From positions 248,001-312,000 of the IMG/VR virus record IMGVR_UViG_3300043399_000877: DNA of 64,000 bases; one strand, written 5' to 3'. Under the pieces are notes generated by a model that was not told where the DNA came from, did not search any database, and saw nothing but the letters and a program-made list of their open reading frames with translations. The position numbers and the translations under genes were made by a program. Shown here piece by piece: positions 22,400 through 54,427 of the stretch (its first letter is position 1; every line of letters begins with the position of its first letter).

Positions 22400-23464
22400 A
22401 TGCCAATATGTAAAGCACTCTATAACCAAGTATGTGTTGAAATCGGTGGAGTTTATAAACCATGCTGTTCATATGTTGGGGACAGTGGTATATCAGTAAA
22501 CGACATGACCCCAAATGAATTTTTAAAATCTGATTATATAGAAAATATAAGAAAAAACATGGAAGGGGATTTATGGGATTCCGGTTGCGTTGGATGCAAA
22601 GTGCGTAGTGAATCTGGGCTCCACACGTTGAAAGATACCTATGACTTTTATTGTAAATCTGATATAGGTACTTTTGAAATGATTGAAATTTCAGTAAGTA
22701 ACAAGTGTAATAACCAATGCAGAATGTGCGATTCTAGGCACAGTAGTTTATGGCAAAATACTTTGGGTTTTGGTAATTCTCCTAAATCTTATTATGATTT
22801 GCAAGCATTAATGAATAATCTAGACGGCAGTGATATAAAGGTAATAAAATATTTAGGTGGTGAACCATTAATAACTGATGAAATAAATCAAGTCTTCGAT
22901 TTTATCAAAAAAAATAAAGAAAATAAAATTTCATTTTATTTTAATACTAACCTATCAGTACCTCCAGAAAAATATCTTAGCGAATTTGAAAATATAGAAA
23001 AATTTGTGATTGGGTATAGCATTGACGGTGTAGGCGCAACTAATGAATATATAAGAGATGGAAGCAATTGGGACACTGTTGTTAGGAATTTAGATAAATG
23101 GGAAAAATTCTTTGAATCCAGATCCGATCAGAGTGAAAGATACGTCCACACCGTATTACAAGCATACAACTATCATGATATTGAAAATATATATAAGTTT
23201 AGTAGTTCGTATGGGTTAGAGCATTTTACACCTCCTATAATTGCGCCACATGAGTTTACATTAAATGCATTGCCTAAAGAGTATATAGAAAAGTATGCCA
23301 CCAGTAGAACGGCAAAATATGTTGATAACCATTCATATAATGCATCGTTGTACGATAAATTAGTAAAAACAACAATTTATCATGATAAGTTATTTCAAAA
23401 ATCAATAAATAATTTTATACCTGAATTGTATTTTTTAAGTAAGAGCAATAATGATACACCATGA
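22400..23464 (+). CDS. Radical SAM enzyme with N-terminal twitch/SPASM-like cluster
   Basis: IC...PCC...CVGC, then CNNQCRMC, LGGEPL, SIDG. Confidence 0.92.
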   Translation: MPICKALYNQVCVEIGGVYKPCCSYVGDSGISVNDMTPNEFLKSDYIENIRKNMEGDLWDSGCVGCKVRSESGLHTLKDTYDFYCKSDIGTFEMIEISVSNKCNNQCRMCDSRHSSLWQNTLGFGNSPKSYYDLQALMNNLDGSDIKVIKYLGGEPLITDEINQVFDFIKKNKENKISFYFNTNLSVPPEKYLSEFENIEKFVIGYSIDGVGATNEYIRDGSNWDTVVRNLDKWEKFFESRSDQSERYVHTVLQAYNYHDIENIYKFSSSYGLEHFTPPIIAPHEFTLNALPKEYIEKYATSRTAKYVDNHSYNASLYDKLVKTTIYHDKLFQKSINNFIPELYFLSKSNNDTP

Positions 23465-24104
23465 AATATACGAAGGAATAAACTTTAATATATACGACGG
23501 TACGTTGGGTGTTAGTGTAAGTGGTGGCGCAGATAGTGCGCTGGTATTATTCTTTTTATTAAAATTTAATAAAAGAAAAATTCATATATTTACATTTGCA
23601 GATCAGCAAAAACACATGATAAACACTAAATCAGCAATTGATGTGGTAAACACCTGCATACAGCTAACTGGCAATAGTAATTTAGAACATCACATAGATT
23701 ATGGTGAAATAAAAGACATAGATACACTATTTAGAAATCATGATTTGTACTTGCAAAATGGAATAGTAGATTATGTGTATACGGGAATAACAAAAAACCC
23801 ACCAAAAGAAGTGACAGACACTTTTTCAGAGCCAGTGCCGGTAACTATACCACGTGATCCAACTGTGGTACGTGATGTACTATGGGATAATACGTGGTAC
23901 AGACCTTGGACAAATTTAAATAAACGTGATTTATACAATATATACAAACAGCATAACTTGTTAGACACGTTGTTTCCAAAAACAAGGAGTTGTGAATTTT
24001 ACAGTACTGATGTTCAAGAAATGGAAGAATTTATAAAAACTCACAAACAGTGTGGAACTTGTTGGTGGTGTGAAGAACGCAAATGGGGATTTGGAAAAAT
24101 ATAA
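23451..24104 (+). CDS. QueC-like PP-loop ATPase (second copy)
   Basis: SVSGGADS, TRSC...QCGTCWWCEER. Confidence 0.8.
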   Translation: MIHHEIYEGINFNIYDGTLGVSVSGGADSALVLFFLLKFNKRKIHIFTFADQQKHMINTKSAIDVVNTCIQLTGNSNLEHHIDYGEIKDIDTLFRNHDLYLQNGIVDYVYTGITKNPPKEVTDTFSEPVPVTIPRDPTVVRDVLWDNTWYRPWTNLNKRDLYNIYKQHNLLDTLFPKTRSCEFYSTDVQEMEEFIKTHKQCGTCWWCEERKWGFGKI

Positions 24105-39892: not shown

Positions 39893-40765
39893 TTATGTCC
39901 CCCATGCATTACCAAATAGTGTTATATGGAGTCTTGGTGTGAATCTCCATCCTTTTTCCATCGCGAGGCGCGCCACTTGTTGAACTGTGAGATCGTATCC
40001 CTCAGTCCTACCTCCAAGCGGCATAAGATATACTGGACACTCAAGACCAGCGGCTCGGAATTCGGCGACGGCACGCTCAACTTCGTCCACATCAATTTGA
40101 TCTGCGACCACAAACTTGAGATAAGTGTCTGAGTTATTAATCCTACTATACTCAAGAGCAATTTCAGGATTGATAGCATCTTCCCAGCGCTCGCCCGATA
40201 CGGAAAGCTTCGGACTGCAACTCCAAGTAACCTTAAATCTTGTTTGATTGTTGAGATAATCTCGGAACTCTTCGTGTAGATGTTGTGTAGTATTTGTTTC
40301 AAACGTAACATTCTTTAAATCCTGCATCCCAGGATGTTCAAAAAGCTCTACATACAGTCGTTGCCATGCAAGCAACGGCTCACCACCGGTCATAATCAAA
40401 TGTATGTCTTGCCCGTTGTCCTGGGTCCATTTTCCGTTAGGTATTAAACTTAGAAGATGTTCCACAACTTCATCAACTGTGCGATCTTTCATCAAGTGCT
40501 TAAATTCCGGATAGATGCTTGCATAAGTATCACAGCCAGTATGAACCAGTGGTAGGTCTTCAAATCTATTTACCTTTTCTGGAACACCATCTTCGATAAG
40601 TTTCTTAACTTCTGGATTATATCTACTTTTGTTTGATCCGCGAGGTAAACCAAAGTTTTGACAACGGAAGTTACACCCGAATGTTCTTAAAAACAAGCTG
40701 GGAACACCCACAAACTTGCCTTCACCTTGAATGCTGTAAAACGCTTCACTATAGCGCAACTTCAT
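39893..40765 (-). CDS. queE: 7-carboxy-7-deazaguanine synthase (radical SAM)
   Basis: EAFYSIQGEG..GVPS.FLR..GCNFRC...GCDT, TGGEPL, ETN, SPKL, TPRLH. Confidence 0.9.
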   Translation of the reverse strand: MKLRYSEAFYSIQGEGKFVGVPSLFLRTFGCNFRCQNFGLPRGSNKSRYNPEVKKLIEDGVPEKVNRFEDLPLVHTGCDTYASIYPEFKHLMKDRTVDEVVEHLLSLIPNGKWTQDNGQDIHLIMTGGEPLLAWQRLYVELFEHPGMQDLKNVTFETNTTQHLHEEFRDYLNNQTRFKVTWSCSPKLSVSGERWEDAINPEIALEYSRINNSDTYLKFVVADQIDVDEVERAVAEFRAAGLECPVYLMPLGGRTEGYDLTVQQVARLAMEKGWRFTPRLHITLFGNAWGT

Positions 40766-41052
40766 TTTAACATCTCCATATTTACTATTCTCGCAACACG
40801 TTCACCAATGTCGTCTTCTTTAGGAATTACATACAATTGAACTTGCGTTTGGTCAACTCTTCTATCGTAACGTCTGAATTCCATAACATGGCCGCCGGTT
40901 GCAGAATATATTCTAAAACTCAAATCACTTTCTGCATCAATACCGCTGCGCGTTGCCGGGTATACACCGGAATCAACTTTTACTGCGTTTCTTCCAGCGT
41001 ATTCCCATGCCTCACGACACTTTTTCTCAAACCATCTATCAAACCATTTCAT
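40762..41052 (-). CDS. Hypothetical phage protein
   Basis: ATGA overlaps between folE and queE. Confidence 0.7.
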   Translation of the reverse strand: MKWFDRWFEKKCREAWEYAGRNAVKVDSGVYPATRSGIDAESDLSFRIYSATGGHVMEFRRYDRRVDQTQVQLYVIPKEDDIGERVARIVNMEMLK

Positions 41053-41735
41053 CTTGGTGCAAAGTCCTGTTGTAGTTTAATATTATGGAAAAACTCTTCT
41101 TTGGTGCTAGCATCGTTCATAAAGCGACCTTTGAGCACAGTAGTTTGTGTAAGACTGCTGTGCGCCATAATTCCGCGGTTTTCGCAGCAGCCGTGTTGTG
41201 CTTGGATGTAAACACCCACGTTTTCACTACCAGTTGCTGACATAATTTCTCTGGCAATGTCCATTGCCAGTTCTTCTTGCAGTGTACCGCGACGCGCACA
41301 CCATTGTGCGATACGAGTGTATTTGCTCAACCCAATGAGGGTATCAGCGGCGATAATACCGATGTAAGCAACTCCTGTAACTGGCTGGTGGTGATGACTG
41401 CAAACACTTTTTAATTCGCTACGAACAACCAACATGCCAGTGTAAGGCTCGTTCGTGTGATTTGGGAATGCTGTAGCATTCGGTTTAGGATAATAGCGCC
41501 CGCGCATGAGCTCATTCACGTACATTTTAGCCAAACGACGACCGGTATCTTGGCTGTTGGGATCGTTATCTCGATCTATAATCAGGCTGTCTAATACTTC
41601 ATTAAACTTGCCAGTTAGTTCGTCAATGAGTTGTTCTTTTTCACCATCCATGATGAAATCAGATATATTATCAGATGCCCAAAATCTTGCGCCAGCGTCT
41701 TCTATTCGTCCCTTGATTGTTTTTGAAATGTCCAT
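41049..41735 (-). CDS. folE: GTP cyclohydrolase I
   Basis: T.RRLAKMY, SVCSHH, IGLSK..R, LQE, H.C...RG, T....G.F, EEF. Confidence 0.93.
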   Translation of the reverse strand: MDISKTIKGRIEDAGARFWASDNISDFIMDGEKEQLIDELTGKFNEVLDSLIIDRDNDPNSQDTGRRLAKMYVNELMRGRYYPKPNATAFPNHTNEPYTGMLVVRSELKSVCSHHHQPVTGVAYIGIIAADTLIGLSKYTRIAQWCARRGTLQEELAMDIAREIMSATGSENVGVYIQAQHGCCENRGIMAHSSLTQTTVLKGRFMNDASTKEEFFHNIKLQQDFAPR

Positions 41736-41768
41736 GTTGTCTCCGAGCTTGTTATTTAGAAAAGAAAA

Positions 41769-41819
41769 GGTACAATACACTTTTAAATGTATTGTACCAC
41801 GTATTTAGGTTTTTGTCAA
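41769..41819 (-). promoter_or_regulatory. Sigma70 promoter overlapped by an 11-bp hairpin/terminator upstream of folE
   Basis: TTGACA-17 bp-TACAAT. The -10 box lies in one arm of GGTACAATACA-N8-TGTATTGTACC, which is followed by a T-rich run. Confidence 0.65.
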
Positions 41820-42517: not shown

Positions 42518-42633
42518 TACTGTTTTTCCTTACGCTCGTTATACTCTTTGAGCTTTAAAGAGTATTGTTCTTCAGTTAATGCATGCCAACCAACACATTT
42601 GCCAGTCGGTGATCTTCCACATCCACAAGTCAT
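42517..42633 (-). CDS. 38-aa CDGSH-like [2Fe-2S] mini-protein
   Basis: Not in the ORF track. MTCGCGRSPTGKCVGWHALTEEQYSLKLKEYNERKEKQ. ATGA and TAATG coupling to both neighbours. Confidence 0.7.
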   Translation of the reverse strand: MTCGCGRSPTGKCVGWHALTEEQYSLKLKEYNERKEKQ

Positions 42634-43202
42634 TTTTCATCCTTTCTTAACCATGAATCCTGTTCCCAGGGATAGACAAGCCATTGATCTTTTTCACGCT
42701 TGTCAACTTCGTGCCACCAATAGTCTGGCTCGAAAGAACTGCCCCAGTTTTGCGTCATTACAGCGAAACGAACGTTTTCCTTCCATACGCTGTTCCACAT
42801 GTCTTGTTCGTTAGGAAAACAACTGCCTTCCCAATCTTTCTTAATCCAATTAAACGTGTTACCACTGTCGTTTATGTCGTCTACGATAAGGATTTTTTTG
42901 CGTTTTTTAATATCCCAGCGGCTTTTGACATACTCACGTTCGCCTTCGTCAACATAACCGACAGCCATTTCCGGGAGCCAGCAGTTGGTTTCAGTATCAG
43001 CATTTGGTTCGCCATCACGCAGTTGCACCTTAACAGTGTGCATCGGAATGCCGATACGGTGACTTAAAATTAAAGCTAATGGCAATCCGCCACGTGTTAT
43101 TCCCACTACGCAGTCAGGTAGCCATTTGTCCTTCAGCAAATTCATTATAATGCAATCTGCTGCGGTTTCCACGTCTCGCCAAGTGTAATATACTTTATCC
43201 AT
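42630..43202 (-). CDS. Type I purine phosphoribosyltransferase (Gpt/Hpt-like)
   Basis: VGITRGGL, ILIVDDINDSGNT PRPP loop, WLVYPWE. Confidence 0.9.
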   Translation of the reverse strand: MDKVYYTWRDVETAADCIIMNLLKDKWLPDCVVGITRGGLPLALILSHRIGIPMHTVKVQLRDGEPNADTETNCWLPEMAVGYVDEGEREYVKSRWDIKKRKKILIVDDINDSGNTFNWIKKDWEGSCFPNEQDMWNSVWKENVRFAVMTQNWGSSFEPDYWWHEVDKREKDQWLVYPWEQDSWLRKDEK

Positions 43203-44853: not shown

Positions 44854-44855
44854 TT

Positions 44856-45932
44856 TTACCTCAATATTTCTCTAACCATTTCAGTCGGGTAAGTATAGTT
44901 TTTCACAATGTGCTCGCATTGAGCCTTATACTCGGCTTCGCGAATATTGTCATAATTATACATGAGATCAGTCAAATAGTCAACAAGTTGTTGCCGATGT
45001 TTCAGATAGGAGTCAAAACTTTCAGTCCATTCTGATGGATACTTAAAACAATCCAAGTAAATTTCCGAATAACAAGCACGATCCGGTACTGCTGGTAATG
45101 CACCGCACATGGTGCCTTCAAGTTGACCATAGCCAAAGTTTTCGTGCAGCGAGCAACTGAACACAATCTTTGATTCTCCCAGCATACGGAAGTAATCATC
45201 CTTGGAAAGTTTCTGATCCTGAGTGATCACATACTCCCAGTCTTGGGGCAGATAGTTAACTAAATCACGGAAAATTTCCGGTTGCTTGTCTGAATTTAGA
45301 CGATGGGTAAACACGATCTGTTTTTTGCGATCGGTGTTGTTCTGGAACGGACGGCACTTCTCTTCAAGGTGTATTGACGGATGGGCTGATTTAACAGCAC
45401 GATCAAAATGCTCCACGGGTATGCCCAGGTTATGCAAGAACATGTCTTTATGGAAATGGCTTGCAAAGTAATTTTGTTTACAAGCATAATACCACGCACG
45501 TTCCTGGTTAAAACTCCATTCCTTGCCAACCTTCATACCCAAAATGTCAGTTGGGTCGTGAGCACCTGCTTCCCAAATGCCGTGAATCTCGACGTCGATA
45601 TCGAGCAACTCGCTCATGTAAATGATCGGGGTGATTACAAAGTTCCATGCGTCCGTAATTAAGAAACGGTCACCGTCCTTTACTTGGTTGGTAGAAAACA
45701 GCCGGCTTATAGCAACCGCTTGAGAACCTTTGTAAATATTTGTTTGTGCAAAATCTAAAAATGCACCTTTTGTAGTCTGGTCAGCAACAGCTTCACCATC
45801 GATAGTTTTTACTTGGAAGTTTTTACCAAGTCTTTGAATTTCTTCGTTGAGGATTTTTGGAATATCCTCATACCATATTGCAGTATAGCGATTAGAAAGC
45901 GGTTCAATAGGTACTACCCAAATTGTGTTCAT
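44856..45932 (-). CDS. GT-B (GT4-like) glycosyltransferase
   Basis: FTHRLNSDKQP and SLHENFGYGQLEG (EX7E). Confidence 0.8.
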   Translation of the reverse strand: MNTIWVVPIEPLSNRYTAIWYEDIPKILNEEIQRLGKNFQVKTIDGEAVADQTTKGAFLDFAQTNIYKGSQAVAISRLFSTNQVKDGDRFLITDAWNFVITPIIYMSELLDIDVEIHGIWEAGAHDPTDILGMKVGKEWSFNQERAWYYACKQNYFASHFHKDMFLHNLGIPVEHFDRAVKSAHPSIHLEEKCRPFQNNTDRKKQIVFTHRLNSDKQPEIFRDLVNYLPQDWEYVITQDQKLSKDDYFRMLGESKIVFSCSLHENFGYGQLEGTMCGALPAVPDRACYSEIYLDCFKYPSEWTESFDSYLKHRQQLVDYLTDLMYNYDNIREAEYKAQCEHIVKNYTYPTEMVREILR

Positions 45933-46297: not shown

Positions 46298-46720
46298 TTA
46301 TTCTGGAATATACTTGATAATACCATCAGACTCGCCGTCTTCTGACACCACAATAGTGTATTCACGATCCGCACCGTAAAGCGGAATAAGATGCTGTTCT
46401 AAAATTTCATTTGCTATCATTTCACAACTTTTATGATCCATGTTTCCGTTTTTAATGAAATCACGCAGAGCCCATTTTACTAAGAAAAATTCTAACTCTC
46501 GATCATGGTGTGTAACCGATGCAGTTACTTCTACTTTAAACATGTGCCTGTGATCAACTTCTAGAAATTTAATTCTAGGATCAATTTCTCCTGCATTTGG
46601 GTAACGATGGAAGCCTTCAAATTCAGTTCTTACTGTTATATAACTCTTTATCATACTTAACTCTTTTAATTTTCTTAAAATATATGCATGGTAACGCTCT
46701 TGATGTTGTTCACCATGCAT
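46298..46720 (-). CDS. QueD-like (6-carboxytetrahydropterin synthase) T-fold protein
   Basis: F..FH, HRH Zn motif, SCEMIA, VSEDGE. Context with folE and queE. Alternative start at 46654. Confidence 0.7.
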   Translation of the reverse strand: MHGEQHQERYHAYILRKLKELSMIKSYITVRTEFEGFHRYPNAGEIDPRIKFLEVDHRHMFKVEVTASVTHHDRELEFFLVKWALRDFIKNGNMDHKSCEMIANEILEQHLIPLYGADREYTIVVSEDGESDGIIKYIPE

Positions 46721-46725
46721 AACTA

Positions 46726-46932
46726 TTACTCGCTTGACGTACCCATTTTGCTCATAATGCGATGAATTTCATCCTTGAGCCAAAGTTTTTGAGTTTTTAA
46801 CTTATATACTTCCGGAGAAGTATTAAGGTTTCCGTACTCACGTTCGATATATTCATCTAATTCTCGGTGTTTACGAATTAGTTCTTCAAGATGTGTACTG
46901 TCTTTATCAATCTGCGCAGCGTAATTGCTCAT
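46726..46932 (-). CDS. DUF465/YdcH-like small coiled-coil protein
   Basis: L...HRELD..I......LK..KL.LKDEI. Confidence 0.7.
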   Translation of the reverse strand: MSNYAAQIDKDSTHLEELIRKHRELDEYIEREYGNLNTSPEVYKLKTQKLWLKDEIHRIMSKMGTSSE

Positions 46933-48595
46933 TTTCCAATGCCTCAAGGTTTTCAATTTCGTCGTCATCAAAGTCTTCTGAATGGCTTTCAGTTTCCACT
47001 TCTTCCACCTTGGGAGGTTCGATGACGTTAAACAATGCACTAAAGCTGGTTCTAGCGTTAATGCTTTTAATTCCAGTTTTACCACGAGCAGCGTTCCCTG
47101 GGATACCCATCCAATAACGATTGTGCTCGTCTATGAGCTCAAGTGCTCGGTCACGATCTGATGTAGCAAATATATCCTCAACAATATCTTTAAAGAACTT
47201 TTGATCAAACTTGCTACCAGACAACATGCTCGGATAAATTCCGTTATCGTATTGTCTGTTTGCTTCCTGAACTGCGTTAATGTGCATCCAGATGTTATGA
47301 CCCATTTGTATTGCATAACTGAAGCTATCCCAACTTGTTCTACCAATCTTATCGATTTTGTTAAAGTCAGGTAGCACGTTGTAATGCTCTGGGTTACGGA
47401 GATCGAACGGTACGCCACCGAGTTCAGCATCAGTTTTTCTAACACCTGGTTTGTAATGACAGATGTCACTTACTTTGAGACCGGCGCTTATGGGGCTGTC
47501 TTCAAATACTTTAAAATAGTTGTCTTGAAGAACTGCGTCTCTGTACAAACGATTGTCAAGGGCATACTTTTTGTCATCAACAGCCTTAAGCATCCTATAC
47601 AACCACTTGGAATTCGGTGGAGTTTCTGTTTGAAGATAAATCTGCCCGTTTGCAGTTGCAAGGAATGGACTTGCACAGTCAAAAGTTATAAGGAAATTTT
47701 CGTTGTGATATTTTCTAATAGCTCGTTGAATGTCAGTAAAAGCAACAGCCCACTCAAGCCTACTGGTTCCCAGGAAGTGTACAACATCTTGGTATCCCTT
47801 TTCTAGCAGACCATCAAAGCGCATCATAACCAGACGCTTTAGTGCAAGGTGCAAATCACAAGTGTGTTGACCACCCATACTCCAACCATTAAAGTGATTG
47901 TTTGGATATATCTTGGGATCAGCATAACGCTTCATGATGTTGTACCAGTTGTCGGCGTCAGCGTGGTTTTCACCCTGTAAAACAGTCAAAAACTTACAGT
48001 TACCGTTTCTTCTACGGATCCAGTCTTCGTTGTTGTACATAGTAGCTGAGACGGCTTCCTGATAGGTGGTAATACCAGTTTTCTCTTTACCCTTGGTTGA
48101 ACGTGTAAGGATCCAGGTCGGAGTATCGAGTGTCATTCCGTAATCCATATAAGTGTCCATCCACTCCAACACCTGTGTGCGTTTTGCGTGTGCTTTTGGA
48201 CAATTGGGATCCTTCCAGTCAGCTTCCCAAACACCTTGACCGATCTGATAGCCACCACTATCACCCAGTAGCCAACTATTTTGACGGTCGCGGTTGCGAA
48301 TCATATCCTCTCTCGCATCAAACTTGTTGATGTCCAGGTTTGCATGACCTGCTGAGTACAGGCTCCATTTGTAATTAAACATTCCCTCTTTGGGGTTTAG
48401 ATAATTTAGACTTTCGACACCGTTGGGAAAGTTAGATGGTATTCTTGCAGGATCTACGTATTGTTCGTGACGCTGCTTGCCCACATACGTTGCATAAAAT
48501 CCACTAAGTGCCGGCAAAAATACGGCATAGTCTTTTTGAGCAGTGGTCAAGTCAGTATTCATTACTCTCTGCTCGTTATTGTTTTCATTTGTCAT
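46907..48595 (-). CDS. dpdA: DpdA-like / TGT-fold 7-deazaguanine DNA transglycosylase
   Basis: TGT-fold motifs GDSGGYQ, TLD.P, VLQG, GWSMGG, HFLG, TFDCAS. Lies next to queD, folE and queE. Confidence 0.72.
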   Translation of the reverse strand: MTNENNNEQRVMNTDLTTAQKDYAVFLPALSGFYATYVGKQRHEQYVDPARIPSNFPNGVESLNYLNPKEGMFNYKWSLYSAGHANLDINKFDAREDMIRNRDRQNSWLLGDSGGYQIGQGVWEADWKDPNCPKAHAKRTQVLEWMDTYMDYGMTLDTPTWILTRSTKGKEKTGITTYQEAVSATMYNNEDWIRRRNGNCKFLTVLQGENHADADNWYNIMKRYADPKIYPNNHFNGWSMGGQHTCDLHLALKRLVMMRFDGLLEKGYQDVVHFLGTSRLEWAVAFTDIQRAIRKYHNENFLITFDCASPFLATANGQIYLQTETPPNSKWLYRMLKAVDDKKYALDNRLYRDAVLQDNYFKVFEDSPISAGLKVSDICHYKPGVRKTDAELGGVPFDLRNPEHYNVLPDFNKIDKIGRTSWDSFSYAIQMGHNIWMHINAVQEANRQYDNGIYPSMLSGSKFDQKFFKDIVEDIFATSDRDRALELIDEHNRYWMGIPGNAARGKTGIKSINARTSFSALFNVIEPPKVEEVETESHSEDFDDDEIENLEALENEQLRCAD

Positions 48596-49034
48596 CGCTG
48601 TCGATGGACTCCTTATAATTCCAAGATTGTAACCTTGAGCTCAACAACTTTTTAAGATCTTCTTCAGTAATACTTGAAGAAATAGGAGTTGTTGAAGATG
48701 AAGATATGCCAGTGGTACTTGTCACAACCCAAGGTGCATACGTGGTACCCGGGAACGACGGATACGTGTTAGGTGATGTCGGGTATGACGGATATGATGT
48801 ATTCGGAGTTTGACGAATGACGGCAATTTCACTACGCATCACTGCCACCTGCATTTTCAAATCATCTATCATTCTTTTAAGGTCATGAAGAGGACCTTTG
48901 TTGGGTTTTTCTTCTTGTGGCTCGACAATGCTAACCACAAGAAGAAGGTTCTTAAGTGCCTTTTTGACTGCTGGATTATCGGACGACAACGCATAATCAA
49001 AAAGCTTTAGTAAATCTTCAAAGTCCTCGTTCAT
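48585..49034 (-). CDS. Hypothetical protein with Ser/Thr/Pro/Tyr-rich segment
   Basis: AGGAG RBS, low-complexity central region. Confidence 0.65.
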   Translation of the reverse strand: MNEDFEDLLKLFDYALSSDNPAVKKALKNLLLVVSIVEPQEEKPNKGPLHDLKRMIDDLKMQVAVMRSEIAVIRQTPNTSYPSYPTSPNTYPSFPGTTYAPWVVTSTTGISSSSTTPISSSITEEDLKKLLSSRLQSWNYKESIDSDDK

Positions 49035-49044
49035 GCAACTCTCC

Positions 49045-49776
49045 TTACTTTTGTGCAGCAGGTATAATAAAATCGTATTTAATCAATTGTGAGTCAACAG
49101 TAATTTTAATAGCACCGCTGTCAGTTATATACATCTGCTTGTCGCCGTCCAGTTGGAGAATTGAAAGCAAGTGCGAAATAGGCCAATAAAAATTGTTGTT
49201 TGTGGTGCCTTCGATATTGGGTTCAAAGACAAATTCACCAGCGTGGCTAGTTGCATCACCAAAGTAAAAAACCAAGTTTCCGTCTTTTACTTTAAGTTGG
49301 CAAAAAGTTTCGCCAGTGTGTGCGCCAGCCATGTTCTTCAGCCTGTTAATTGATGCAAGACTGGGAGTAAATTCCAAGTTCCACTTTGCACCCTTGAACT
49401 CAACCTTCTTGAGCTTTTCGTCAAGAACGTTCTTGTTTACAAAGCGATAAGTGTTGGTAAAGTCGCCAGCCTTGTTTTCAAACTTTGCATAAACTGGAAC
49501 AACCACACCGTTACGCTCTTCACTCTTAATAGTGATCTTAGCGTCTTCGCGGTATTCGTTATTCTTAACCAAATAAGCCAGTTTGCCGAGATCTGCAATA
49601 CCAAAAACTCCGGTAAAGTCAGGAACAGTCTCGTGTGTTTTTGCAAGCAAGATAAGAGACAGGTCTTCAGAAACACTGTCAATAGAAACACCGTCGGTTT
49701 CGTGAGTTAATCTCAGCATGTTTAAAACGCCCACAGGCTGAGCATGTGTGACGATATCAGTTAAAATAGAAAGCAT
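49045..49776 (-). CDS. DNA polymerase sliding clamp (gp45/PCNA-like)
   Basis: 243 aa with a two-domain beta/alpha pattern, FGI.DL..L, and C-terminal G.I.I.V......Y.FIIPA. Close to polB. Confidence 0.65.
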   Translation of the reverse strand: MLSILTDIVTHAQPVGVLNMLRLTHETDGVSIDSVSEDLSLILLAKTHETVPDFTGVFGIADLGKLAYLVKNNEYREDAKITIKSEERNGVVVPVYAKFENKAGDFTNTYRFVNKNVLDEKLKKVEFKGAKWNLEFTPSLASINRLKNMAGAHTGETFCQLKVKDGNLVFYFGDATSHAGEFVFEPNIEGTTNNNFYWPISHLLSILQLDGDKQMYITDSGAIKITVDSQLIKYDFIIPAAQK

Positions 49777-49835: not shown

Positions 49836-50597
49836 TTATTTTCGTATCGTTTTGTTATAATCGACAGCCGCTCTAAGTGTATTTAGATCGACACCTTTTT
49901 TCTCTGCCATATTTAGAAGAGCAGCAGTATCTTTGGGGAAGCAATATCCACCCCAACCACGAAAACCAAGCTCTGGATGAACAAAAGTGTGGCTGTCACC
50001 AATTCTTGGATCTTTTATCAAACCGTCGCGCACAGCATAGAAGTCTAATCCAGATGCATTACAAAAATCAAACATTTCGTTAAAAAAACTTAACTTGGTT
50101 GCAAGAAAAGAGTTTTCAAAATATTTGATAGCAATACAATTTTCTATGCTGTATTCATAAAAGATTAAATCAGGATATACTCGTATGAAAAAATCCTTCC
50201 AAAAATCGCACATAGGCCCATTAGACAGTATAGTGTATTTTAGATTTTGCATATCTTCCACTGCGCTCTCTGCTCTTAAAAATTCTGGAGAGAACGTTAT
50301 CGAATGATCGGGGAATTGGTCACGTATTGTTTGTAATCCTTCAAGATCAATCGTGCTTTTTATTAATATCGGAACTGAAGCAGGGGTGTCGTTTATGACA
50401 TCGATCACGTTACTGATATCGCAACTGCCATCCGAAGACGGCGGAGTTGATACACAACAAATTACACCATCGATGTGGTGTAAATCGGATATATTATTAA
50501 CGTTGTATTTTGGATCAACAATAAAAAGATTATAATGATCTTTTAGCGATTCAAAAAACGCCTGGCCAACAAAGCCATAACCAGCAATTACATACAT
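49836..50597 (-). CDS. UDP-glucose 6-dehydrogenase-like protein lacking the C-terminal domain
   Basis: IAGYGFVG, CVSTP, IKST, SPEFLR, KYFENSFLATK, GWGGYCFPKD. Only 253 aa. Confidence 0.85.
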   Translation of the reverse strand: MYVIAGYGFVGQAFFESLKDHYNLFIVDPKYNVNNISDLHHIDGVICCVSTPPSSDGSCDISNVIDVINDTPASVPILIKSTIDLEGLQTIRDQFPDHSITFSPEFLRAESAVEDMQNLKYTILSNGPMCDFWKDFFIRVYPDLIFYEYSIENCIAIKYFENSFLATKLSFFNEMFDFCNASGLDFYAVRDGLIKDPRIGDSHTFVHPELGFRGWGGYCFPKDTAALLNMAEKKGVDLNTLRAAVDYNKTIRK

Positions 50598-50600
50598 TGA

Positions 50601-51344
50601 TTATTCCGCTATTTTTGCTTCCACAAGGTATTGTAGTGTTTCAAAAGTATCCCGCCAGTCCTTAACACTAAAAGTACGACCGTTTTGCAGCTTTTCTACT
50701 GCTGATGCGATGGAATGGTCGTTACCACCGGGCTCGGTGCGATCACCAAAAAAGAATATTTTAGATTCTTTTTTAAAGTCATTCAGTACTTGGCTCTTAT
50801 CACAACCTCTTGGGAATATGTCTAGCCCTGTTTCACCACCTATTTGAGCATGCAATTCTGGAAAACGAAGATTAAACTCTTGAGCAATTTGTGCTCGCTC
50901 ACCAGTTTCAATGTCCCACTTACGATACATTAGTCGTTCACCTAGAGTTGCACCCCTGCCCACGATGCTAAAATTAACAGTTCCGGTTCTTATTTCTATG
51001 TGGGTACCGGTCCTAAGTGGAAATTTACTAGCCTTGAGATGCTCAAGTAACCAGCGTTCAACTTCTATTCCCATGCGCCAATCGTTTTGGAATATGCGAT
51101 GCCCTTTGGTCCAGACTTCATTACCAGAACAATTATATACACGTTCAACACTTAGGCATAGATCGATACCCAACTGTTCAATAGTTTTATTATAGTCGCT
51201 TCCGGTTACCAGGTATACTCTATTTCTTCTACAAAAATCAAGGAACCATTCTTCAAAATTTGCATCTATTTTTCCCCTGCTGGGGGTAAGTGTGCCGTCT
51301 ACGTCAAATAAAAAATTATTTGTTGTTTTTGTTTGCTGCGTCAT
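50601..51344 (-). CDS. HAD-IIB phosphomannomutase (eukaryotic PMM-like)
   Basis: FDVDGTLT, VTGSD, G.HIE.R.G..NFS..GR, GG..G.DIFP.G.DK, FFGD....GGND. Confidence 0.85.
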   Translation of the reverse strand: MTQQTKTTNNFLFDVDGTLTPSRGKIDANFEEWFLDFCRRNRVYLVTGSDYNKTIEQLGIDLCLSVERVYNCSGNEVWTKGHRIFQNDWRMGIEVERWLLEHLKASKFPLRTGTHIEIRTGTVNFSIVGRGATLGERLMYRKWDIETGERAQIAQEFNLRFPELHAQIGGETGLDIFPRGCDKSQVLNDFKKESKIFFFGDRTEPGGNDHSIASAVEKLQNGRTFSVKDWRDTFETLQYLVEAKIAE

Positions 51345-51759
51345 TGTCAATCTCACTTTCCACTACACGCTTTCTGAGGTCACTGCTGCTAAAACGATGA
51401 TCCCGTTTGTTAAAATATAAGTCAATTCCACGTTTTTTGCATATATCACGCCCGGTAAACTCTTTTTCTCTGTACTCTTCACCGAGTATTCTCACATCAA
51501 TTCTATACAAATTTAAAATGTCTTCAAGATCACGTTCAGATGCATAAGGTATTATTTCGTCAACATACTTTACGCCCTTGAGCTGTGTATATCTTTCAAC
51601 AATACTCTGGACCGGAGAGTTTTTATTCCTCCGGTCCAAGCTAGGATCTAGTTGCAATCCGCAAATCAAGTAATCACACTGTTCTTTTGCTTCGCGTAGC
51701 ATTTGAACATGTCCAGCATGCAACAAATCAAATGCAGAGGCAGTAAATCCCACTCTCAT
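51316..51759 (-). CDS. Glycerol-3-phosphate cytidylyltransferase-like protein (TagD family)
   Basis: FDLLHAGH, ER...L..VKYVDEI, R.H.FSSS.LR. Confidence 0.85.
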   Translation of the reverse strand: MRVGFTASAFDLLHAGHVQMLREAKEQCDYLICGLQLDPSLDRRNKNSPVQSIVERYTQLKGVKYVDEIIPYASERDLEDILNLYRIDVRILGEEYREKEFTGRDICKKRGIDLYFNKRDHRFSSSDLRKRVVESEIDNDAANKNNK

Positions 51760-51760
51760 T

Positions 51761-54427
51761 TTAGACGATCCTGAACAAACTGGTAAAGGTTTCATTTTGT
51801 TTTGTGCTTTCTAAGTCATATTCCAGAACGCCAATAAGGTTGTCTAGCTTATTGTCAATGATTGTTTCTTCCATTGCAGCATCATCAAAAGGCAATTCCT
51901 TAAACCAGTCAGGAAGTCTAAGTTCGTCAGTCGGATATGCAACACTTGTAAATCCCATCGGGTTATTTTTTAATTTACAAACAATAACCTTCATTCCATC
52001 AACGATTTCAATGCTGTATTTGTCGCCGTTCATTCGTTTTAATGTATTCCAGTTAATACTTGCCCGAACGTGTCCGGGTAAAACTGCTTTACTGCCTTTT
52101 TTCTTTTCTTCACGTTCGTAATGCTGAATGTTGTTTGCACGTTTTGGAGAACCTTTTTCGTAGCCAGGACGGCTCTTAAATTCATTCCTGAATTCTTTAA
52201 CTGATGCAAGTATTTCAGCTTCGGGGCGGCCTTTTAGAACCATAAGTAACACTTCCATTAAGTATTCTTGCATGAATACCGGAGTATCCGAACGCTTTAG
52301 GTCCAATCCCATTGCCTTTACTTTTCCAGGTTTGCCGTCCACGTCTTTTCTCTTACCCTCTTCGTCATATACTAACACAGCATAACGCTTCTTGGTAATA
52401 AAAAGTCCACTTTCACCGACTATTTCTCGACCAGCAGCAATAACTTCTGCTCTGCTCTTTGGACAATGGAAAGCCTGGCCCATGAAATCGGAGAAACTGC
52501 GGTTTACTTCATCAGCTATTTGGTCGTATAGTTCAACAACTGTTTCCTTGGTCCACGGAACCAAGTTCTTTTCAATGTCATCTTTCAATACCGGGTACAT
52601 GCTAAAATACACAGAGTCTGTATCACCGTATATGATAGTTTTTCCAATATGATTGTATTCTCCAGTTGCAATTTCATTAACTTTTGCAGCCATGTGCTTG
52701 GCAATTCCACGACCAGTAAGGGTTGTACTTTGTCCGATGCGCTTATCAAAAAATCTACAACCTGGGTTAAGAATAGCACCATAAAGACTGTTAAGGTTGA
52801 TCTTTTTAACCAGCTGTCGTTTATCCCAAAACTCTATTTCAGATTGTACTCCAGCTTCAACAGCTTTTTTCTTCATAGCTTGAAGCTCTTTACGCTCTTT
52901 GTACCATCTTGCAAGCAATCCGGGTATAACAGCCTCAAACTCAGTCGTAAAAATAGTGCCGTTTGCACTGATCATCCAAGGCTTGTTACTGTCAAATATA
53001 AGTTTAAATGCCTGTGCTGCGCTCATTACTTCGCTATTACCGTTAACCCAGTCAACAGTTACGTCGAAATCGACTCGCTCATCCATAATTGCAGCATATT
53101 CTAGGGTACCAAACAATCCTTCCCATGCAGCACTGAAACTCTTTTTCTTTAGAGTCATCTGATCTTCAATATATTTGTCAGTGGCTGTTGGCCTAACTTG
53201 ACCGATTATACTTTCTGGTGCCATGTTTAATGCACGAATAACCGATGGATACAGGCTGTTCAAGTCCATTGAGCCAATCCAACGATGGAAGCCTTTTTTT
53301 GGATTCGCAACATATGCGCCGGCTGCTTGAGTGTCTTCCTCAAAGTTTCCACGATTCTGGACTTGCATTCCACGTCGATGTGCTTCGTTAATGATTGCCT
53401 GTTCAGTAACAGCCACAGCGCCCATGGTTGTCTGTATTAACACAGTGTTATCATGAGCGATCTCGTTAGCCAGATCAATAAACCGCAGTTTTTTATCTAG
53501 TTTGTCAAGTAGTGCAACGTCCTGTCGGTTATACTCAATGAATGTTCTAAAATCATTGTTGTAGAGTTGATCCAGTGTGCCTTCATATTGCGTTTTACGT
53601 TCGTTTAGTTCATATTCACCGATTGCGTCCAGTCGATAACTGTGTCGTTCTTCGTAAGTATACTTTCTGTAAAGTTCAAGACTGTCTAAATGTATGCGGC
53701 CTACTAAATCGTAAGTTTCGGCAGTCTTACCAAATTTTTCATACTCACGTTTCTTTGGAAACTGATTCCATAAACAAAATCTGCGAGTATCGCTTTTGCT
53801 CATAACTCTTGCTACACGGTTTACCATGTAGGGAATATCGTAGCCTTCGCTGTTCCAACCACTGAGAATGTCTGCATCCTCAATTAAGTTGAAAAACTCT
53901 TCAAGCATTTCAATTTCAGACTCGAATATAAAAGTATTGCTGAAATCTTTAACTAATTCACGAGCATCGGCAACGGATAGCGATTTGGGTGGGATCGCCA
54001 AAGTTACCAAACTGTCCATCCATTGTAAATGCACAGTGATAGCAGTGATTGGCATAAATGGATCGTTTGTTGGAGCAAATCCCCGGTTTGGGTCAAAGTC
54101 AGTTTCAATGTCAAAGAACGCAATATGCAACTTTGGTGCATCTTGGTTGATGTAGTTTTCACTTAAACATTGAAATATAGGATTTATATCACTTTCGAAC
54201 AACCGCTTGTTCTTGTTTATGGCAAGTTCTTTACGATACTCTTTGGTATTTTTACAAACGATCCTGGAAAGCGGATCTCCATAGACGCTGCGAAACTTTC
54301 CACGCTGGTCTTCATAATAAAAAGTATATTTTGTGGGATATTGTTGATACATGCGCTTTCCGTCTTTGCGCTCTACAACATTTATAACGTCAGCATCCCT
54401 ATCAAAAAATGCATCAATGTACGGCAT
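51761..54427 (-). CDS. Family B DNA polymerase (gp43-like)
   Basis: Exo motifs DIET, GWN...YD and YN.QD. Pol motifs DLNSLYPS, K...NSLYG, YGDTDS and KKRY. Confidence 0.96.
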   Translation of the reverse strand: MPYIDAFFDRDADVINVVERKDGKRMYQQYPTKYTFYYEDQRGKFRSVYGDPLSRIVCKNTKEYRKELAINKNKRLFESDINPIFQCLSENYINQDAPKLHIAFFDIETDFDPNRGFAPTNDPFMPITAITVHLQWMDSLVTLAIPPKSLSVADARELVKDFSNTFIFESEIEMLEEFFNLIEDADILSGWNSEGYDIPYMVNRVARVMSKSDTRRFCLWNQFPKKREYEKFGKTAETYDLVGRIHLDSLELYRKYTYEERHSYRLDAIGEYELNERKTQYEGTLDQLYNNDFRTFIEYNRQDVALLDKLDKKLRFIDLANEIAHDNTVLIQTTMGAVAVTEQAIINEAHRRGMQVQNRGNFEEDTQAAGAYVANPKKGFHRWIGSMDLNSLYPSVIRALNMAPESIIGQVRPTATDKYIEDQMTLKKKSFSAAWEGLFGTLEYAAIMDERVDFDVTVDWVNGNSEVMSAAQAFKLIFDSNKPWMISANGTIFTTEFEAVIPGLLARWYKERKELQAMKKKAVEAGVQSEIEFWDKRQLVKKINLNSLYGAILNPGCRFFDKRIGQSTTLTGRGIAKHMAAKVNEIATGEYNHIGKTIIYGDTDSVYFSMYPVLKDDIEKNLVPWTKETVVELYDQIADEVNRSFSDFMGQAFHCPKSRAEVIAAGREIVGESGLFITKKRYAVLVYDEEGKRKDVDGKPGKVKAMGLDLKRSDTPVFMQEYLMEVLLMVLKGRPEAEILASVKEFRNEFKSRPGYEKGSPKRANNIQHYEREEKKKGSKAVLPGHVRASINWNTLKRMNGDKYSIEIVDGMKVIVCKLKNNPMGFTSVAYPTDELRLPDWFKELPFDDAAMEETIIDNKLDNLIGVLEYDLESTKQNETFTSLFRIV

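What the first reader, a model, noticed from the sequence alone, without database searches (positions are those of the whole stretch)
47030..47050. DpdA-like enzyme carries a short motif resembling the DNA polymerase C-terminus: clamp-coupled base exchange?
Seen: near its C-terminus, just before an acidic tail, the DpdA-like protein has RTSFSALF. The polymerase ends QNETFTSLFRIV (TFTSLF at 51773-51790). The shared pattern is [TS]F[ST][AS]LF, and the clamp gene lies two genes upstream of dpdA. Known: T4/RB69 gp43 binds gp45 through a C-terminal hydrophobic LxxLF-type peptide. Inference: the transglycosylase rides the sliding clamp and modifies nascent phage DNA selectively, which would explain discrimination between phage and host DNA.
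Basis: partly seen in the sequence, partly recalled or inferred. Interest (0 to 1): 0.72.

Follow-up and report, generated by a model that had tools for sequence, protein, structure and literature searches.

The report
Clamp-docking tail on phage DNA transglycosylase
A jumbo phage enzyme that probably swaps guanine in DNA for a 7-deazaguanine carries, in a floppy tail, the same short peptide its DNA polymerase uses to hold the sliding clamp. DNA modification is therefore probably tethered to the replication machinery.

Summary

Both gene identities hold, but only by fold:
- The 562-aa protein is a divergent tRNA-guanine-transglycosylase (TGT) fold enzyme with the three catalytic Asp residues. 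It sits among FolE, QueE-like and QueC-like genes.
- The 243-aa product of 49045-49776(-) is a PCNA-like clamp.

The motif is not chance:
- 118 of 120 close homologues keep it, although it lies in a low-confidence linker of variable length.
- It is enriched about tenfold in the tails of distant homologues.
- In seven lineages the tail matches the C-terminus of that lineage's own polymerase, including a variant form (NNxDLFxW) in one Vibrio phage.
- Homologues in clamp-less jumbo phages have basic tails without the motif. Those sampled on bacterial or integrase-bearing contigs lack it too.

A complex model docks residues 515-528 into the clamp's canonical partner pocket (score 0.64, best control 0.00).

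Binding, DNA as the substrate, and discrimination between phage and host DNA remain untested. No paper found links DpdA to a clamp. I rate it a new variant of known kinds.

The parts
46907..48595 (-). Divergent TGT-superfamily, DpdA-like transglycosylase, 562 aa. Catalytic-type residues: D112 (48260-48262, in the DSGG motif), D157 (48125-48127) and D306 (47678-47680, in the FDC motif).
   Evidence: AF2 mean pLDDT 91.2. Foldseek matches TGT with probability 1.00. VIA-align Z 19 over about 300 residues to bacterial, human and archaeal TGT. hhalign against E. coli Tgt aligns D112/D157/D306 with D89/D143/D264. These three Asp are invariant in 74 diverse homologues. No hit in Pfam, PHROG, NCBIfam or PADLOC, and no sequence hit in the PDB.
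47054..47083 (-). Low-confidence linker (aa 505-514) between the catalytic body and the motif.
   Evidence: pLDDT under 50 for residues 505-518. Homologues P0002 and P0003 carry a 27-residue insertion here yet keep the motif.
47030..47053 (-). Putative clamp-interaction peptide RTSFSALF (aa 515-522). Family consensus: N-A-S-T-x-F-x-x-L-F-x-V.
   Evidence: T516 and F518 are nearly invariant and F522 invariant in close homologues. 118 of 120 keep F..[LMF]F. The complex model has residues 515-518, 520-525 and 527-528 touching the clamp pocket.
46910..47029 (-). Acidic tail (aa 523-562) ending in a conserved helix of the form LExLExEQL (aa 544-559, 46919-46966). Role unknown.
   Evidence: L550 is invariant; E554, E556, Q557 and L558 are nearly so. 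Helix 544-559 has pLDDT of about 87 in the monomer model.
49045..49776 (-). PCNA/gp45-type sliding clamp subunit, 243 aa.
   Evidence: AF2 pLDDT 91.8. Foldseek matches PCNA at E 2e-11 with probability 1.00. VIA-align Z 18.8 over 226 of 243 residues. Predicted contact residues F127, G129, G221, A222, I237, P239 and A240 are invariant or nearly so in 24 homologues. Sequence libraries find only PHROG 12062, 'unknown function'.
48585..49034 (-). 149-aa ORF between the clamp and the transglycosylase, of unknown function.
   Evidence: No family hit. Absent or replaced in relatives, where the clamp gene abuts the transglycosylase gene (L020, L021).
51761..54427 (-). T4/RB69 gp43-type family B DNA polymerase, 888 aa. 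The C-terminal peptide TFTSLF lies at 51773-51790.
   Evidence: Pfam DNA_pol_B and exo1; PHROG 262 at E 1e-200. The thumb region matches RB69 and T4 gp43 chains in the PDB. Tail read.
41049..41780 (-). GTP cyclohydrolase I (FolE), the first step of 7-deazaguanine synthesis.
   Evidence: Pfam PF01227, E 1e-37.
39893..40765 (-). QueE-like radical SAM enzyme (7-carboxy-7-deazaguanine synthase-like).
   Evidence: NCBIfam QueE models at E 5e-12 to 5e-8, all below their curated cut-offs. The syntenic PA5oct gene is annotated as QueE.
23451..24104 (+). QueC-like PP-loop ATPase.
   Evidence: Pfam QueC at 32 bits, above the 22-bit cut-off, but only the N-terminal stretch matches. NCBIfam QueC at E 2.5e-6, below cut-off.
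42630..43202 (-). Purine phosphoribosyltransferase-like protein that travels with FolE and the transglycosylase.
   Evidence: Pfam Pribosyltran, E 1e-13. Weak xanthine/HGPRT-type NCBIfam hits. The same neighbour is found in L014, L016, L020, L021, L040 and L042.

Best explanation
The 562-aa protein is a very divergent member of the tRNA-guanine transglycosylase (TGT) superfamily. It most likely works like a phage DpdA, exchanging guanine in phage DNA for a 7-deazaguanine made from GTP by the phage's own FolE, QueD-like, QueE-like and QueC-like enzymes.

Its catalytic body is followed by a flexible linker and a short hydrophobic peptide (T-x-F-x-x-L-F, then acidic residues). This peptide is the same kind that ends the phage's gp43-type polymerase. 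The peptide most likely inserts into the hydrophobic pocket of the phage's PCNA-like clamp, formed by the interdomain connector loop and the C-terminus. The enzyme would then be held on DNA that the phage replisome has just loaded with clamps, and could scan it.

Shown here: the folds, the catalytic residues, conservation of the motif, its position in a low-confidence stretch, and its match to the cognate polymerase tail.

Inferred: physical binding to the clamp, DNA as the substrate, the identity of the inserted base, and any gain in processivity or selectivity.
For: Identities.
- TGT fold and catalytic Asp triad.
- PCNA fold of the 243-aa protein.
- A clamp-loader-like AAA+ gene in the genome.
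- A gp43-type polymerase.

Deazaguanine context.
- FolE, QueE-like and QueC-like genes in the window, and a PTPS (QueD-type) gene elsewhere in the genome.
- Vibrio phage 2.275.O has QueF, a queuosine biosynthesis protein, FolE and QueD next to its homologue.
- A bacterial homologue sits beside QueC, QueE-like and QueD-type genes.
- PA5oct, which has a 35%-identical homologue, has virion DNA resistant to several G-containing restriction sites (PMC12191111). It was already noted to hold a deazaguanine synthesis/incorporation system (PMC7824862).

Motif.
- Kept in 118 of 120 close homologues despite a linker of variable length.
- 20 of 102 distant representatives have it in the last 40 residues, against 1.7 expected.
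- Low pLDDT around it.

Paired tails, polymerase / transglycosylase, in seven lineages:
- window: TFTSLF / SFSALF
- L020: TFNTLF / QFYAMF
- L021: TFSSLF / QFNALF
- PA5oct: HFDSLFGW / SFNSLF
- L041: LFDSLF / VFDAMF
- Phosso: FNDLFTF / IVEGLF (at the C-terminus)
- Vibrio 2.275.O: NNTDLFDW / NNNDLFGW (both at the C-terminus)

Presence and absence.
- Pseudomonas putida and Xanthomonas jumbo phages, in which neither this clamp nor a family B polymerase was found, have Lys/Arg-rich tails without LF.
- The one bacterial-genome member examined and two members on integrase-bearing contigs also lack the motif.

Synteny. The clamp gene lies directly upstream or one gene upstream of the transglycosylase gene in the window, L020, L021, PA5oct, the P0004 contig and Vibrio 2.275.O.

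Complex model. Clamp trimer plus both tails scored 0.64, with best control 0.00. That mark was reached by 58 of 80 solved complexes and 2 of 110 mismatched pairs. Contacts are motif residues 515-528 with clamp residues 39-42, 119-130, 196, 220-222 and 237-242.

Precedent. The hydrophobic-acidic C-termini of T4 gp43, gp55 and gp33 bind gp45 through variable unstructured linkers and are interchangeable (PMC2988020).
Against: - No binding measurement exists.
- The complex model may be recalling the many solved PCNA-peptide complexes. Its controls were unrelated proteins, not motif mutants, and the tool warns that its calibration holds only roughly for this job. The polymerase tail was in the job but was not scored.
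- In the window the motif is internal, with 40 residues following it. The T4 epitopes are at the very C-terminus.
- The motif is neither a canonical PIP box nor QL[SD]LF.
- About half of the distant homologues lack a clear motif.
- The enzyme matches no DpdA or TGT sequence model, and the family profile finds nothing in the DpdA3-bearing phage CP220. 'DpdA-like' therefore rests on fold, catalytic residues and gene context.
- The phage encodes tRNA-Asp(GTC), tRNA-Asn(GTT) and tRNA-Tyr(GTA), which are classical TGT substrates. A tRNA role is not excluded.
Confidence: 0.62

Rival explanations
1. The motif is a real, selected docking peptide, but its partner is not the phage clamp. Candidates are the host beta clamp, whose ligands carry QL[SD]LF-like peptides, or another replisome protein that the polymerase tail also touches.
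For: F-S-A-L-F loosely resembles the bacterial QLSLF-type motif (my own knowledge). Conservation and the match to the polymerase tail show a shared partner but do not name it. The only partner-specific evidence is a model.
Against: These phages encode their own PCNA-like clamp and clamp loader, and the clamp gene lies next to the enzyme gene. In the T4/RB69 system the homologous polymerase tail binds the phage clamp (PMC2988020). In the two clamp-less phage lineages examined the motif is absent and replaced by basic tails; if it targeted the host clamp it should persist there. Replacing the clamp with an unrelated protein dropped the model score to 0.00.
Confidence: 0.14
2. The enzyme is a phage tRNA-guanine transglycosylase acting on the phage's own GUN-anticodon tRNAs. 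The tail motif serves something other than DNA tethering.
For: The fold and catalytic residues are those of tRNA TGTs. The genome has 42 predicted tRNAs, including Asp(GTC), Asn(GTT) and Tyr(GTA).
Against: A tRNA enzyme has no evident use for a peptide that matches the polymerase's clamp-binding tail, nor for a gene position beside the clamp. In clamp-less phages the tail is Lys/Arg-rich, which fits DNA binding. PA5oct DNA behaves as G-modified (PMC12191111). One bacterial-genome homologue sits beside QueC, QueE-like and QueD-type genes and an integrase gene, as in Dpd-type islands.
Confidence: 0.1
3. The motif acts within the protein or between copies of it. For example, together with the acidic tail and terminal helix it might fold back on the DNA-binding groove as an autoinhibitor or oligomerisation element. 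The likeness to the polymerase tail would then be convergence on a generic hydrophobic peptide.
For: The terminal helix 544-559 is modelled with pLDDT of about 87, as if it were docked on the body. The acidic tail could mimic DNA (inference).
Against: The motif itself is modelled with low confidence and is not packed. It tracks lineage-specific variants of the polymerase tail, such as NNxDLFxW in Vibrio phage 2.275.O. In many homologues it is the extreme C-terminus, with no acidic tail or helix after it.
Confidence: 0.09
4. Chance resemblance with no function.
For: The pattern was defined after seeing the two proteins. F..LF occurs 16 times in the proteome, and one virion structural protein also ends in SFNSLF.
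Against: Kept in 118 of 120 close homologues across an unalignable linker, enriched about tenfold in distant tails, and matched to the polymerase tail in seven lineages.
Confidence: 0.03

Closest known systems
C-terminal clamp-binding epitopes of T4/RB69 gp43, gp55 and gp33, which bind gp45
   Same: A short hydrophobic-plus-acidic peptide, tethered by a variable unstructured linker, shared between the polymerase and non-polymerase clients of a phage trimeric clamp (PMC2988020). The polymerase here is a gp43 homologue. The model places the peptide at the connector-loop/C-terminus pocket.
   Different: The client is a base-exchange enzyme, which is not a known gp45 partner class. In the window the peptide is internal to a longer acidic tail rather than terminal. 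The clamp is recognisable only by fold.
Phage and bacterial DpdA DNA 7-deazaguanine transglycosylases (bDpdA, DpdA1-4)
   Same: A TGT-fold enzyme encoded with FolE, QueD, QueE and QueC genes in phage genomes, expected to replace G in DNA after replication (PMC6884629, PMC10516641).
   Different: Not detected by the TGT Pfam model, DUF6610 (the DpdA4 family), PADLOC or NCBIfam. The family profile finds nothing in the DpdA3-bearing phage CP220. A clamp-binding peptide has not been described for any DpdA in the papers searched.
Clamp-tethered DNA modification and repair enzymes of cells, such as DNMT1, UNG2 and MSH6 on PCNA, or MutS/MutL on the beta clamp (my own knowledge; clamp 'tool-belt' review PMC9690074 listed)
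   Same: The logic is the same: a short linear motif couples a base-modifying or base-excising enzyme to newly replicated DNA through the clamp.
   Different: Different enzyme class, and a viral clamp. The motif is not a canonical PIP box (Qxx[ILM]xx[FY][FY]).
Bacterial tRNA-guanine transglycosylase (Tgt)
   Same: TIM-barrel fold. The DSGG, substrate-binding and FDC aspartates align with E. coli D89, D143 and D264.
   Different: About 14% identity. Roughly 200 extra residues. No conserved Cys/His zinc site is evident among the invariant columns. The gene context is the DNA replication module.

Membership tests
TGT superfamily (tRNA-guanine transglycosylase fold) | (beta/alpha)8 barrel TGT fold | tested here: met
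   Foldseek probability 1.00, E 2e-6. VIA-align Z 18-19 over about 300 residues to bacterial, eukaryotic and archaeal TGT, on a model with pLDDT 91.
TGT superfamily (tRNA-guanine transglycosylase fold) | Catalytic aspartates: the general acid/base in DSGG, the base-recognising Asp, and the nucleophile in FDC (E. coli D89, D143, D264; roles from established knowledge) | tested here: met
   hhalign aligns D112, D157 and D306 to these positions (probability only 67%, E 5e-5). All three are invariant in 74 diverse homologues.
TGT superfamily (tRNA-guanine transglycosylase fold) | Match to the curated sequence model (Pfam PF01702) | tested here: not met
   No Pfam hit at E 0.01 or better. The six-frame search of the genome with PF01702 found nothing at E 1 or better.
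TGT superfamily (tRNA-guanine transglycosylase fold) | Structural zinc site (Cys3-His) | tested here: inconclusive
   No invariant Cys across 74 homologues; only H273 is invariant. The hhalign alignment ends before the E. coli zinc region.
DpdA (DNA 7-deazaguanine transglycosylase) | Encoded together with 7-deazaguanine precursor genes (FolE, QueD, QueE, QueC) | tested here: met
   Window and genome. Relatives: Vibrio phage 2.275.O, PA5oct and a bacterial island. FolE is adjacent in six metagenomic contexts.
DpdA (DNA 7-deazaguanine transglycosylase) | Sequence membership in a described subfamily (bDpdA, DpdA1-4) | tested here: not met
   No hit from PADLOC, NCBIfam, Pfam TGT or DUF6610. The family profile finds no match in the CP220 genome, which carries DpdA3. 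No DpdA3 sequence was compared directly.
DpdA (DNA 7-deazaguanine transglycosylase) | Inserts a 7-deazaguanine into DNA | not testable with these tools
   Indirect only: PA5oct DNA resists G-containing restriction sites (PMC12191111).
PCNA/gp45-type sliding clamp (the 243-aa protein) | Two-domain clamp fold of about 240 residues | tested here: met
   pLDDT 91.8. Foldseek E 2e-11. VIA-align Z 18.8 over 226 of 243 residues.
PCNA/gp45-type sliding clamp (the 243-aa protein) | Works with a clamp loader and a replicative polymerase encoded by the same genome | tested here: met
   An AAA+/DNA_pol3_delta2 protein at G000 about 323.0-323.9 kb. A gp43-type polymerase about 2 kb away.
PCNA/gp45-type sliding clamp (the 243-aa protein) | Closed trimeric ring around DNA | tested here: inconclusive
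   Folded as three copies with mean pLDDT of about 82 for the non-partner chains, but ring geometry was not reported.
Clamp-interacting peptide (T4 gp43/gp55/gp33 type; PIP-like) | Short hydrophobic motif with acidic flank in an unstructured terminal tail behind a variable linker | tested here: met
   Description of the T4 epitopes in PMC2988020.
Clamp-interacting peptide (T4 gp43/gp55/gp33 type; PIP-like) | Likeness to the cognate polymerase's clamp-binding C-terminus | tested here: met
   Seven polymerase/transglycosylase pairs.
Clamp-interacting peptide (T4 gp43/gp55/gp33 type; PIP-like) | Position at the extreme C-terminus | tested here: not met
   In the window 40 residues follow the motif. 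The motif is terminal in Vibrio 2.275.O, Phosso and many representatives.
Clamp-interacting peptide (T4 gp43/gp55/gp33 type; PIP-like) | Canonical PIP box Qxx[ILM]xx[FY][FY] or bacterial QL[SD]LF | tested here: not met
   RTSFSALF has no Gln and ends in L-F. Only the subclade P0002-P0004 has F..FF.
Clamp-interacting peptide (T4 gp43/gp55/gp33 type; PIP-like) | Binds the hydrophobic pocket under the interdomain connector loop | tested here: inconclusive
   Model only: score 0.64 against best control 0.00. The mark was reached by 58 of 80 solved complexes and 2 of 110 mismatched pairs. Contacts are at clamp residues 119-130 and 237-242. Recall of solved PCNA-peptide complexes is possible.

The most novel reading that the evidence does not exclude
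A very large, unannotated family of jumbo-phage DpdA-like enzymes (more than 7,700 homologues, mostly marine) performs replication-coupled base exchange. The enzyme rides the phage PCNA-like clamp through a polymerase-like peptide, which makes guanine replacement processive and confines it to DNA made by the phage replisome. The targeting tail is modular. In clamp-less phages a basic DNA-binding tail takes its place, and the members sampled in bacterial or integrase-bearing contexts lack the peptide.
Probability: 0.45. Interest if true: 0.78.

Novelty: new variant of a known kind. Interest (0 to 1): 0.68.

Why it matters
Phage 7-deazaguanine DNA modifications are regarded as post-replicative (PMC10516641). 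How a base-exchange enzyme finds and modifies enough guanines in phage DNA is not explained.

A clamp tether would give a concrete, testable mechanism that links hypermodification to the replication fork. It would add a new class of client to viral sliding clamps. It would also assign a function to a family with thousands of unannotated members in ocean metagenomes and in culturable jumbo phages such as PA5oct, so the idea can be tested at the bench.

The motif also gives a simple sequence rule for finding further clamp clients in these phages: a tail that matches the cognate polymerase's C-terminus.

Tried and rejected
- **Sequence-only identification failed for both proteins.** Pfam, PHROG, NCBIfam and PADLOC gave nothing useful, and neither single-sequence nor profile searches of the PDB did. 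Only folds identified them.
- **No near relative in the phage collection.** Megablast of the region found none.
- **DpdA3 link not found.** The family profile found nothing in Campylobacter phage CP220. A DpdA3 protein sequence was not obtained for a direct profile comparison, so the relation to DpdA3 is unresolved rather than excluded.
- **Other clamp clients in the genome.** Only the polymerase, the transglycosylase and a 776-aa virion structural protein end with or contain the full motif. I treat the structural protein as chance. Looser LF-terminal candidates, such as window 59086-60540, had no informative family. The FEN/RNase H homologues show no such tail.
- **Contigs too short or unavailable.** Several metagenomic look-ups returned contigs that did not reach the polymerase, and one returned no DNA.
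- **Limits of the complex job.** The polymerase tail was included but not scored, so there is no internal positive control.
- **Canonical motifs rejected.** Readings of the peptide as a canonical PIP box or QL[SD]LF were rejected on sequence.
Full report
**Setting.** The window is bases 248,001-312,000 of a 381,886-bp virus record, a jumbo phage with 42% G+C. The finding concerns the C-terminal region of the ORF 46907-48595 on the minus strand.

**Check of the observation.**
- The ORF encodes 562 residues. Residues 515-522 read RTSFSALF and map to 47053-47030. They are followed by a 40-residue acidic tail.
- The family B polymerase (51761-54427, minus strand, 888 aa) ends ...KQNETFTSLFRIV, with TFTSLF at 51790-51773.
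- The proposed clamp gene (49045-49776, minus) is the second gene upstream.
The pattern was drawn after seeing the two proteins, so I give more weight to conservation.

**What the two proteins are.** Neither is recognised by sequence libraries.
- *The 562-aa protein.* It has no hit in Pfam, PHROG, NCBIfam or PADLOC, and no sequence hit in the PDB.
  - An AlphaFold2 model built on 74 diverse homologues has mean pLDDT 91.2.
  - It matches tRNA-guanine transglycosylases (TGT) with Foldseek probability 1.00 and VIA-align Z of about 19 over some 300 residues.
  - A profile-to-sequence alignment with E. coli Tgt puts D112 (in LGDSGGYQ), D157 and D306 (in FDCASP) on D89, D143 and D264.
  - These three Asp are among only nine columns invariant across the 74 homologues.
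- *The 243-aa protein.* It hits only an 'unknown function' PHROG family. Its model has pLDDT 91.8 and matches PCNA at Foldseek E 2e-11 and Z 18.8 over 226 of 243 residues.
- A clamp-loader-like AAA+ gene lies elsewhere in the genome.
- The polymerase's thumb domain matches RB69 and T4 gp43.

**Why a DNA 7-deazaguanine enzyme is the likeliest function.**
- The window holds FolE (41049-41780), a QueE-like radical SAM enzyme (39893-40765) and a QueC-like protein (23451-24104). The genome also holds a PTPS (QueD-type) gene.
- In Vibrio phage 2.275.O the homologue sits beside QueF, a queuosine biosynthesis protein, FolE and QueD.
- One homologue in a bacterial genome lies between QueC, QueE-like and QueD-type genes and an integrase gene.
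- PA5oct has a 35%-identical homologue annotated 'hypothetical'. Its DNA resists several G-containing restriction sites (PMC12191111). An earlier comparative study listed it as holding a deazaguanine synthesis/incorporation system (PMC7824862).
- The family is large: more than 7,700 homologues in one search and 901 representatives at 50% identity in another.
- It matches none of the described DpdA sequence models, and its profile finds nothing in the DpdA3-bearing phage CP220. I treat it as a separate, unannotated subfamily that works like DpdA. Membership in DpdA1-4 is not shown.

**The motif is a selected short linear motif.**
- In 30 aligned close homologues, T516 and F518 are nearly invariant and F522 is invariant. 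The consensus is VNASTxFxxLFxV.
- Two homologues carry a 27-residue insertion just before the motif and still keep it.
- Of 120 close homologues, 118 keep F..[LMF]F and the other two keep LF.
- Among 102 full-length representatives that are at most 50% identical to one another, 20 have F..[LMF]F in the last 40 residues. Shuffled tails give 1.7 +/- 1.3 and internal windows give 0.5. The looser hydrophobic-x-x-[LMF]F form occurs in 40, against 8.8 expected.
- Residues 505-518 have pLDDT below 50, and the motif forms at most one helical turn. It is not buried in the fold.

**The motif matches each phage's own polymerase tail.** I could read both tails in seven lineages:

| Lineage | Polymerase tail | Transglycosylase tail |
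|---|---|---|
| Window | ETFTSLFRIV (C-terminus) | TSFSALFNVIE |
| L020 | NTFNTLFDFGA (C-terminus) | TQFYAMFDVSE |
| L021 | NTFSSLFDFGD (C-terminus) | TQFNALFEVSE |
| PA5oct | HFDSLFGW (C-terminus) | NSFNSLFDVDA |
| L041 | QLFDSLFG (C-terminus) | SVFDAMFETND |
| Phosso | TFNDLFTF (C-terminus) | IVEGLF (C-terminus) |
| Vibrio phage 2.275.O | NNTDLFDW (C-terminus) | NNNDLFGW (C-terminus) |

The Vibrio phage pair shares a variant form not seen in the others. That is what a common binding site predicts.

**Presence and absence.**
- Pseudomonas putida phage Peetri and Xanthomonas phage PhiXhv-12 have distant homologues, but neither this clamp nor a family B polymerase was found in them. Their tails are Lys/Arg-rich and lack LF.
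- Three motif-less representatives lie on bacterial or integrase-bearing contigs with no polymerase-clamp pair nearby.
- These are few lineages, and a 20-kb context does not prove that a clamp is absent from the genome.

**Synteny.** The order polymerase, sugar-nucleotide genes, clamp, transglycosylase, DUF465, phosphoribosyltransferase, FolE, 5'-3' exonuclease recurs in L020 and L021, and largely on the P0004 contig. The polymerase, clamp and transglycosylase keep the same order in PA5oct. In L020 and L021 the clamp gene directly abuts the transglycosylase gene.

**Complex model.** The job held a clamp trimer, the polymerase's last 30 residues, and transglycosylase residues 500-540 as the scored partner.
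- It scored 0.64, with a best control of 0.00. That mark was reached by 58 of 80 solved complexes and 2 of 110 mismatched pairs. The tool adds that these counts hold only roughly for this job.
- The confident contacts are motif residues 515-518, 520-525 and 527-528 with clamp residues 39-42, 119-130, 196, 220-222 and 237-242. These are the interdomain connector loop, the C-terminus and the pocket between them, which is the canonical partner site of PCNA-type clamps.
- Seven of these clamp residues (F127, G129, G221, A222, I237, P239, A240) are invariant or nearly so in 24 clamp homologues.
- Caveats: the model may be recalling solved PCNA-peptide complexes. The controls were unrelated proteins rather than motif mutants. 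The polymerase tail was not scored.

**Mechanism proposed.** After the phage clamp loader places clamps on primer-template junctions, clamps stay on newly made duplex DNA. The transglycosylase docks to a free clamp subunit by its flexible tail and is held on that DNA. There it flips out guanines and exchanges them for the phage-made 7-deazaguanine.
- Precedent: T4 gp43, gp55 and gp33 share interchangeable hydrophobic-acidic C-termini that bind gp45 through variable linkers (PMC2988020).
- The general logic is that of clamp 'tool-belt' clients such as DNMT1 and UNG2 on PCNA (my own knowledge).
- Shown: identities, motif conservation, low model confidence around the motif, and its match to the polymerase tail.
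- Inferred: binding, DNA as the substrate, the base inserted, and any gain in processivity.

**Rivals.**
- *A different partner, such as the host beta clamp (0.14).* The motif's absence in the two clamp-less phage lineages argues against it.
- *A tRNA role (0.10).* The phage encodes 42 predicted tRNAs, including Asp(GTC), Asn(GTT) and Tyr(GTA). However, a clamp-type peptide and basic tails fit DNA better.
- *An intramolecular or regulatory role together with the acidic tail and terminal helix (0.09).*
- *Chance (0.03).*

**Novelty.** Neither of the two DpdA survey papers read mentions a clamp. A full-text search for DpdA with 'sliding clamp' returned two papers whose titles and term counts suggest only incidental co-mention; they were not read. 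A broader search found nothing relevant. The parts are of known kinds: a TGT/DpdA-type enzyme, a PCNA-like clamp and a clamp-binding peptide. Their combination, and the subfamily itself, are not described in the library searched. I rate this a new variant of a known kind, with interest 0.68.

Noticed in passing
window 43837-45932 and 49836-51795; also L014, L016, L018, L020, L021: Sugar-nucleotide genes sit inside the replication/modification module and are syntenic in relatives. They are a cytidylyltransferase-like gene, a phosphomannomutase, a UDP-glucose/GDP-mannose dehydrogenase-like gene, a GDP-mannose 4,6-dehydratase-like gene and a glycosyltransferase-like gene. They may point to a sugar-bearing hypermodified base, or to something unrelated.
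   Followed up: partly
window 41049-41780 and 42630-43202; also L014, L016, L020, L021, L040, L042: A FolE plus purine phosphoribosyltransferase pair accompanies the transglycosylase gene in every context examined. The guanine released by base exchange could be salvaged to GMP and fed back into deazaguanine synthesis.
   Followed up: partly
window 46910-47029 (aa 523-562): After the motif come an acidic stretch and a conserved terminal helix (LExLExEQL, aa 544-559). The helix is modelled with pLDDT of about 87, as if it were docked on the enzyme. It could be a second partner site or an autoinhibitory DNA mimic.
   Followed up: no
L023:11860-13230 (Pseudomonas phage Peetri) and L024:9389-11095 (Xanthomonas phage PhiXhv-12): Distant homologues occur in jumbo phages in which neither this clamp nor a family B polymerase was found. 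They end in Lys/Arg-rich tails instead of the LF peptide, which suggests the targeting tails are modular.
   Followed up: partly
L038:7070-11467 (bacterial genome contig, GCA_943370095.1): A motif-less family member lies in a bacterial island with QueD-type, QueE-like and QueC genes, a 229-aa ORF, a 555-aa ORF, an NB-ARC protein and an integrase. This looks like a Dpd-type DNA modification or defence island that uses this divergent transglycosylase.
   Followed up: no
G000:C1:206549-208879 (L002:2550-4880, + strand): A 776-aa virion structural protein (PHROG 11190) ends ...SFTNTINSFNSLF, which is the same core motif at its extreme C-terminus. It sits in a Ser/Thr/Asn-rich region, so this is probably chance.
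   Followed up: partly
window about 46726-46932 (minus strand): A small DUF465 gene overlaps the 3' end of the transglycosylase gene by about 26 nt. The same arrangement is seen in L020 and on the P0004 contig.
   Followed up: no
L041:8737-9493: In this metagenomic relative the clamp homologue is called as two ORFs of 82 and 168 aa. This may be a frameshift, an assembly error or a split gene.
   Followed up: no
G000:C1:8903-21109, 75375-75749 and 354392-363400: ARAGORN predicts 42 tRNA genes in three clusters. They include Asp(GTC), Asn(GTT) and Tyr(GTA), plus a few odd calls: a tRNA with a CTA anticodon labelled Pyl, and two with irregular anticodon loops.
   Followed up: no
window 46298-46720 (minus strand): A 140-aa ORF just downstream of the transglycosylase/DUF465 pair matches only PHROG 17812 (unknown function). 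It contains an H-R-H-x-F-K-V-E stretch that recalls QueD/PTPS-type metal sites. Its identity is unresolved.
   Followed up: no
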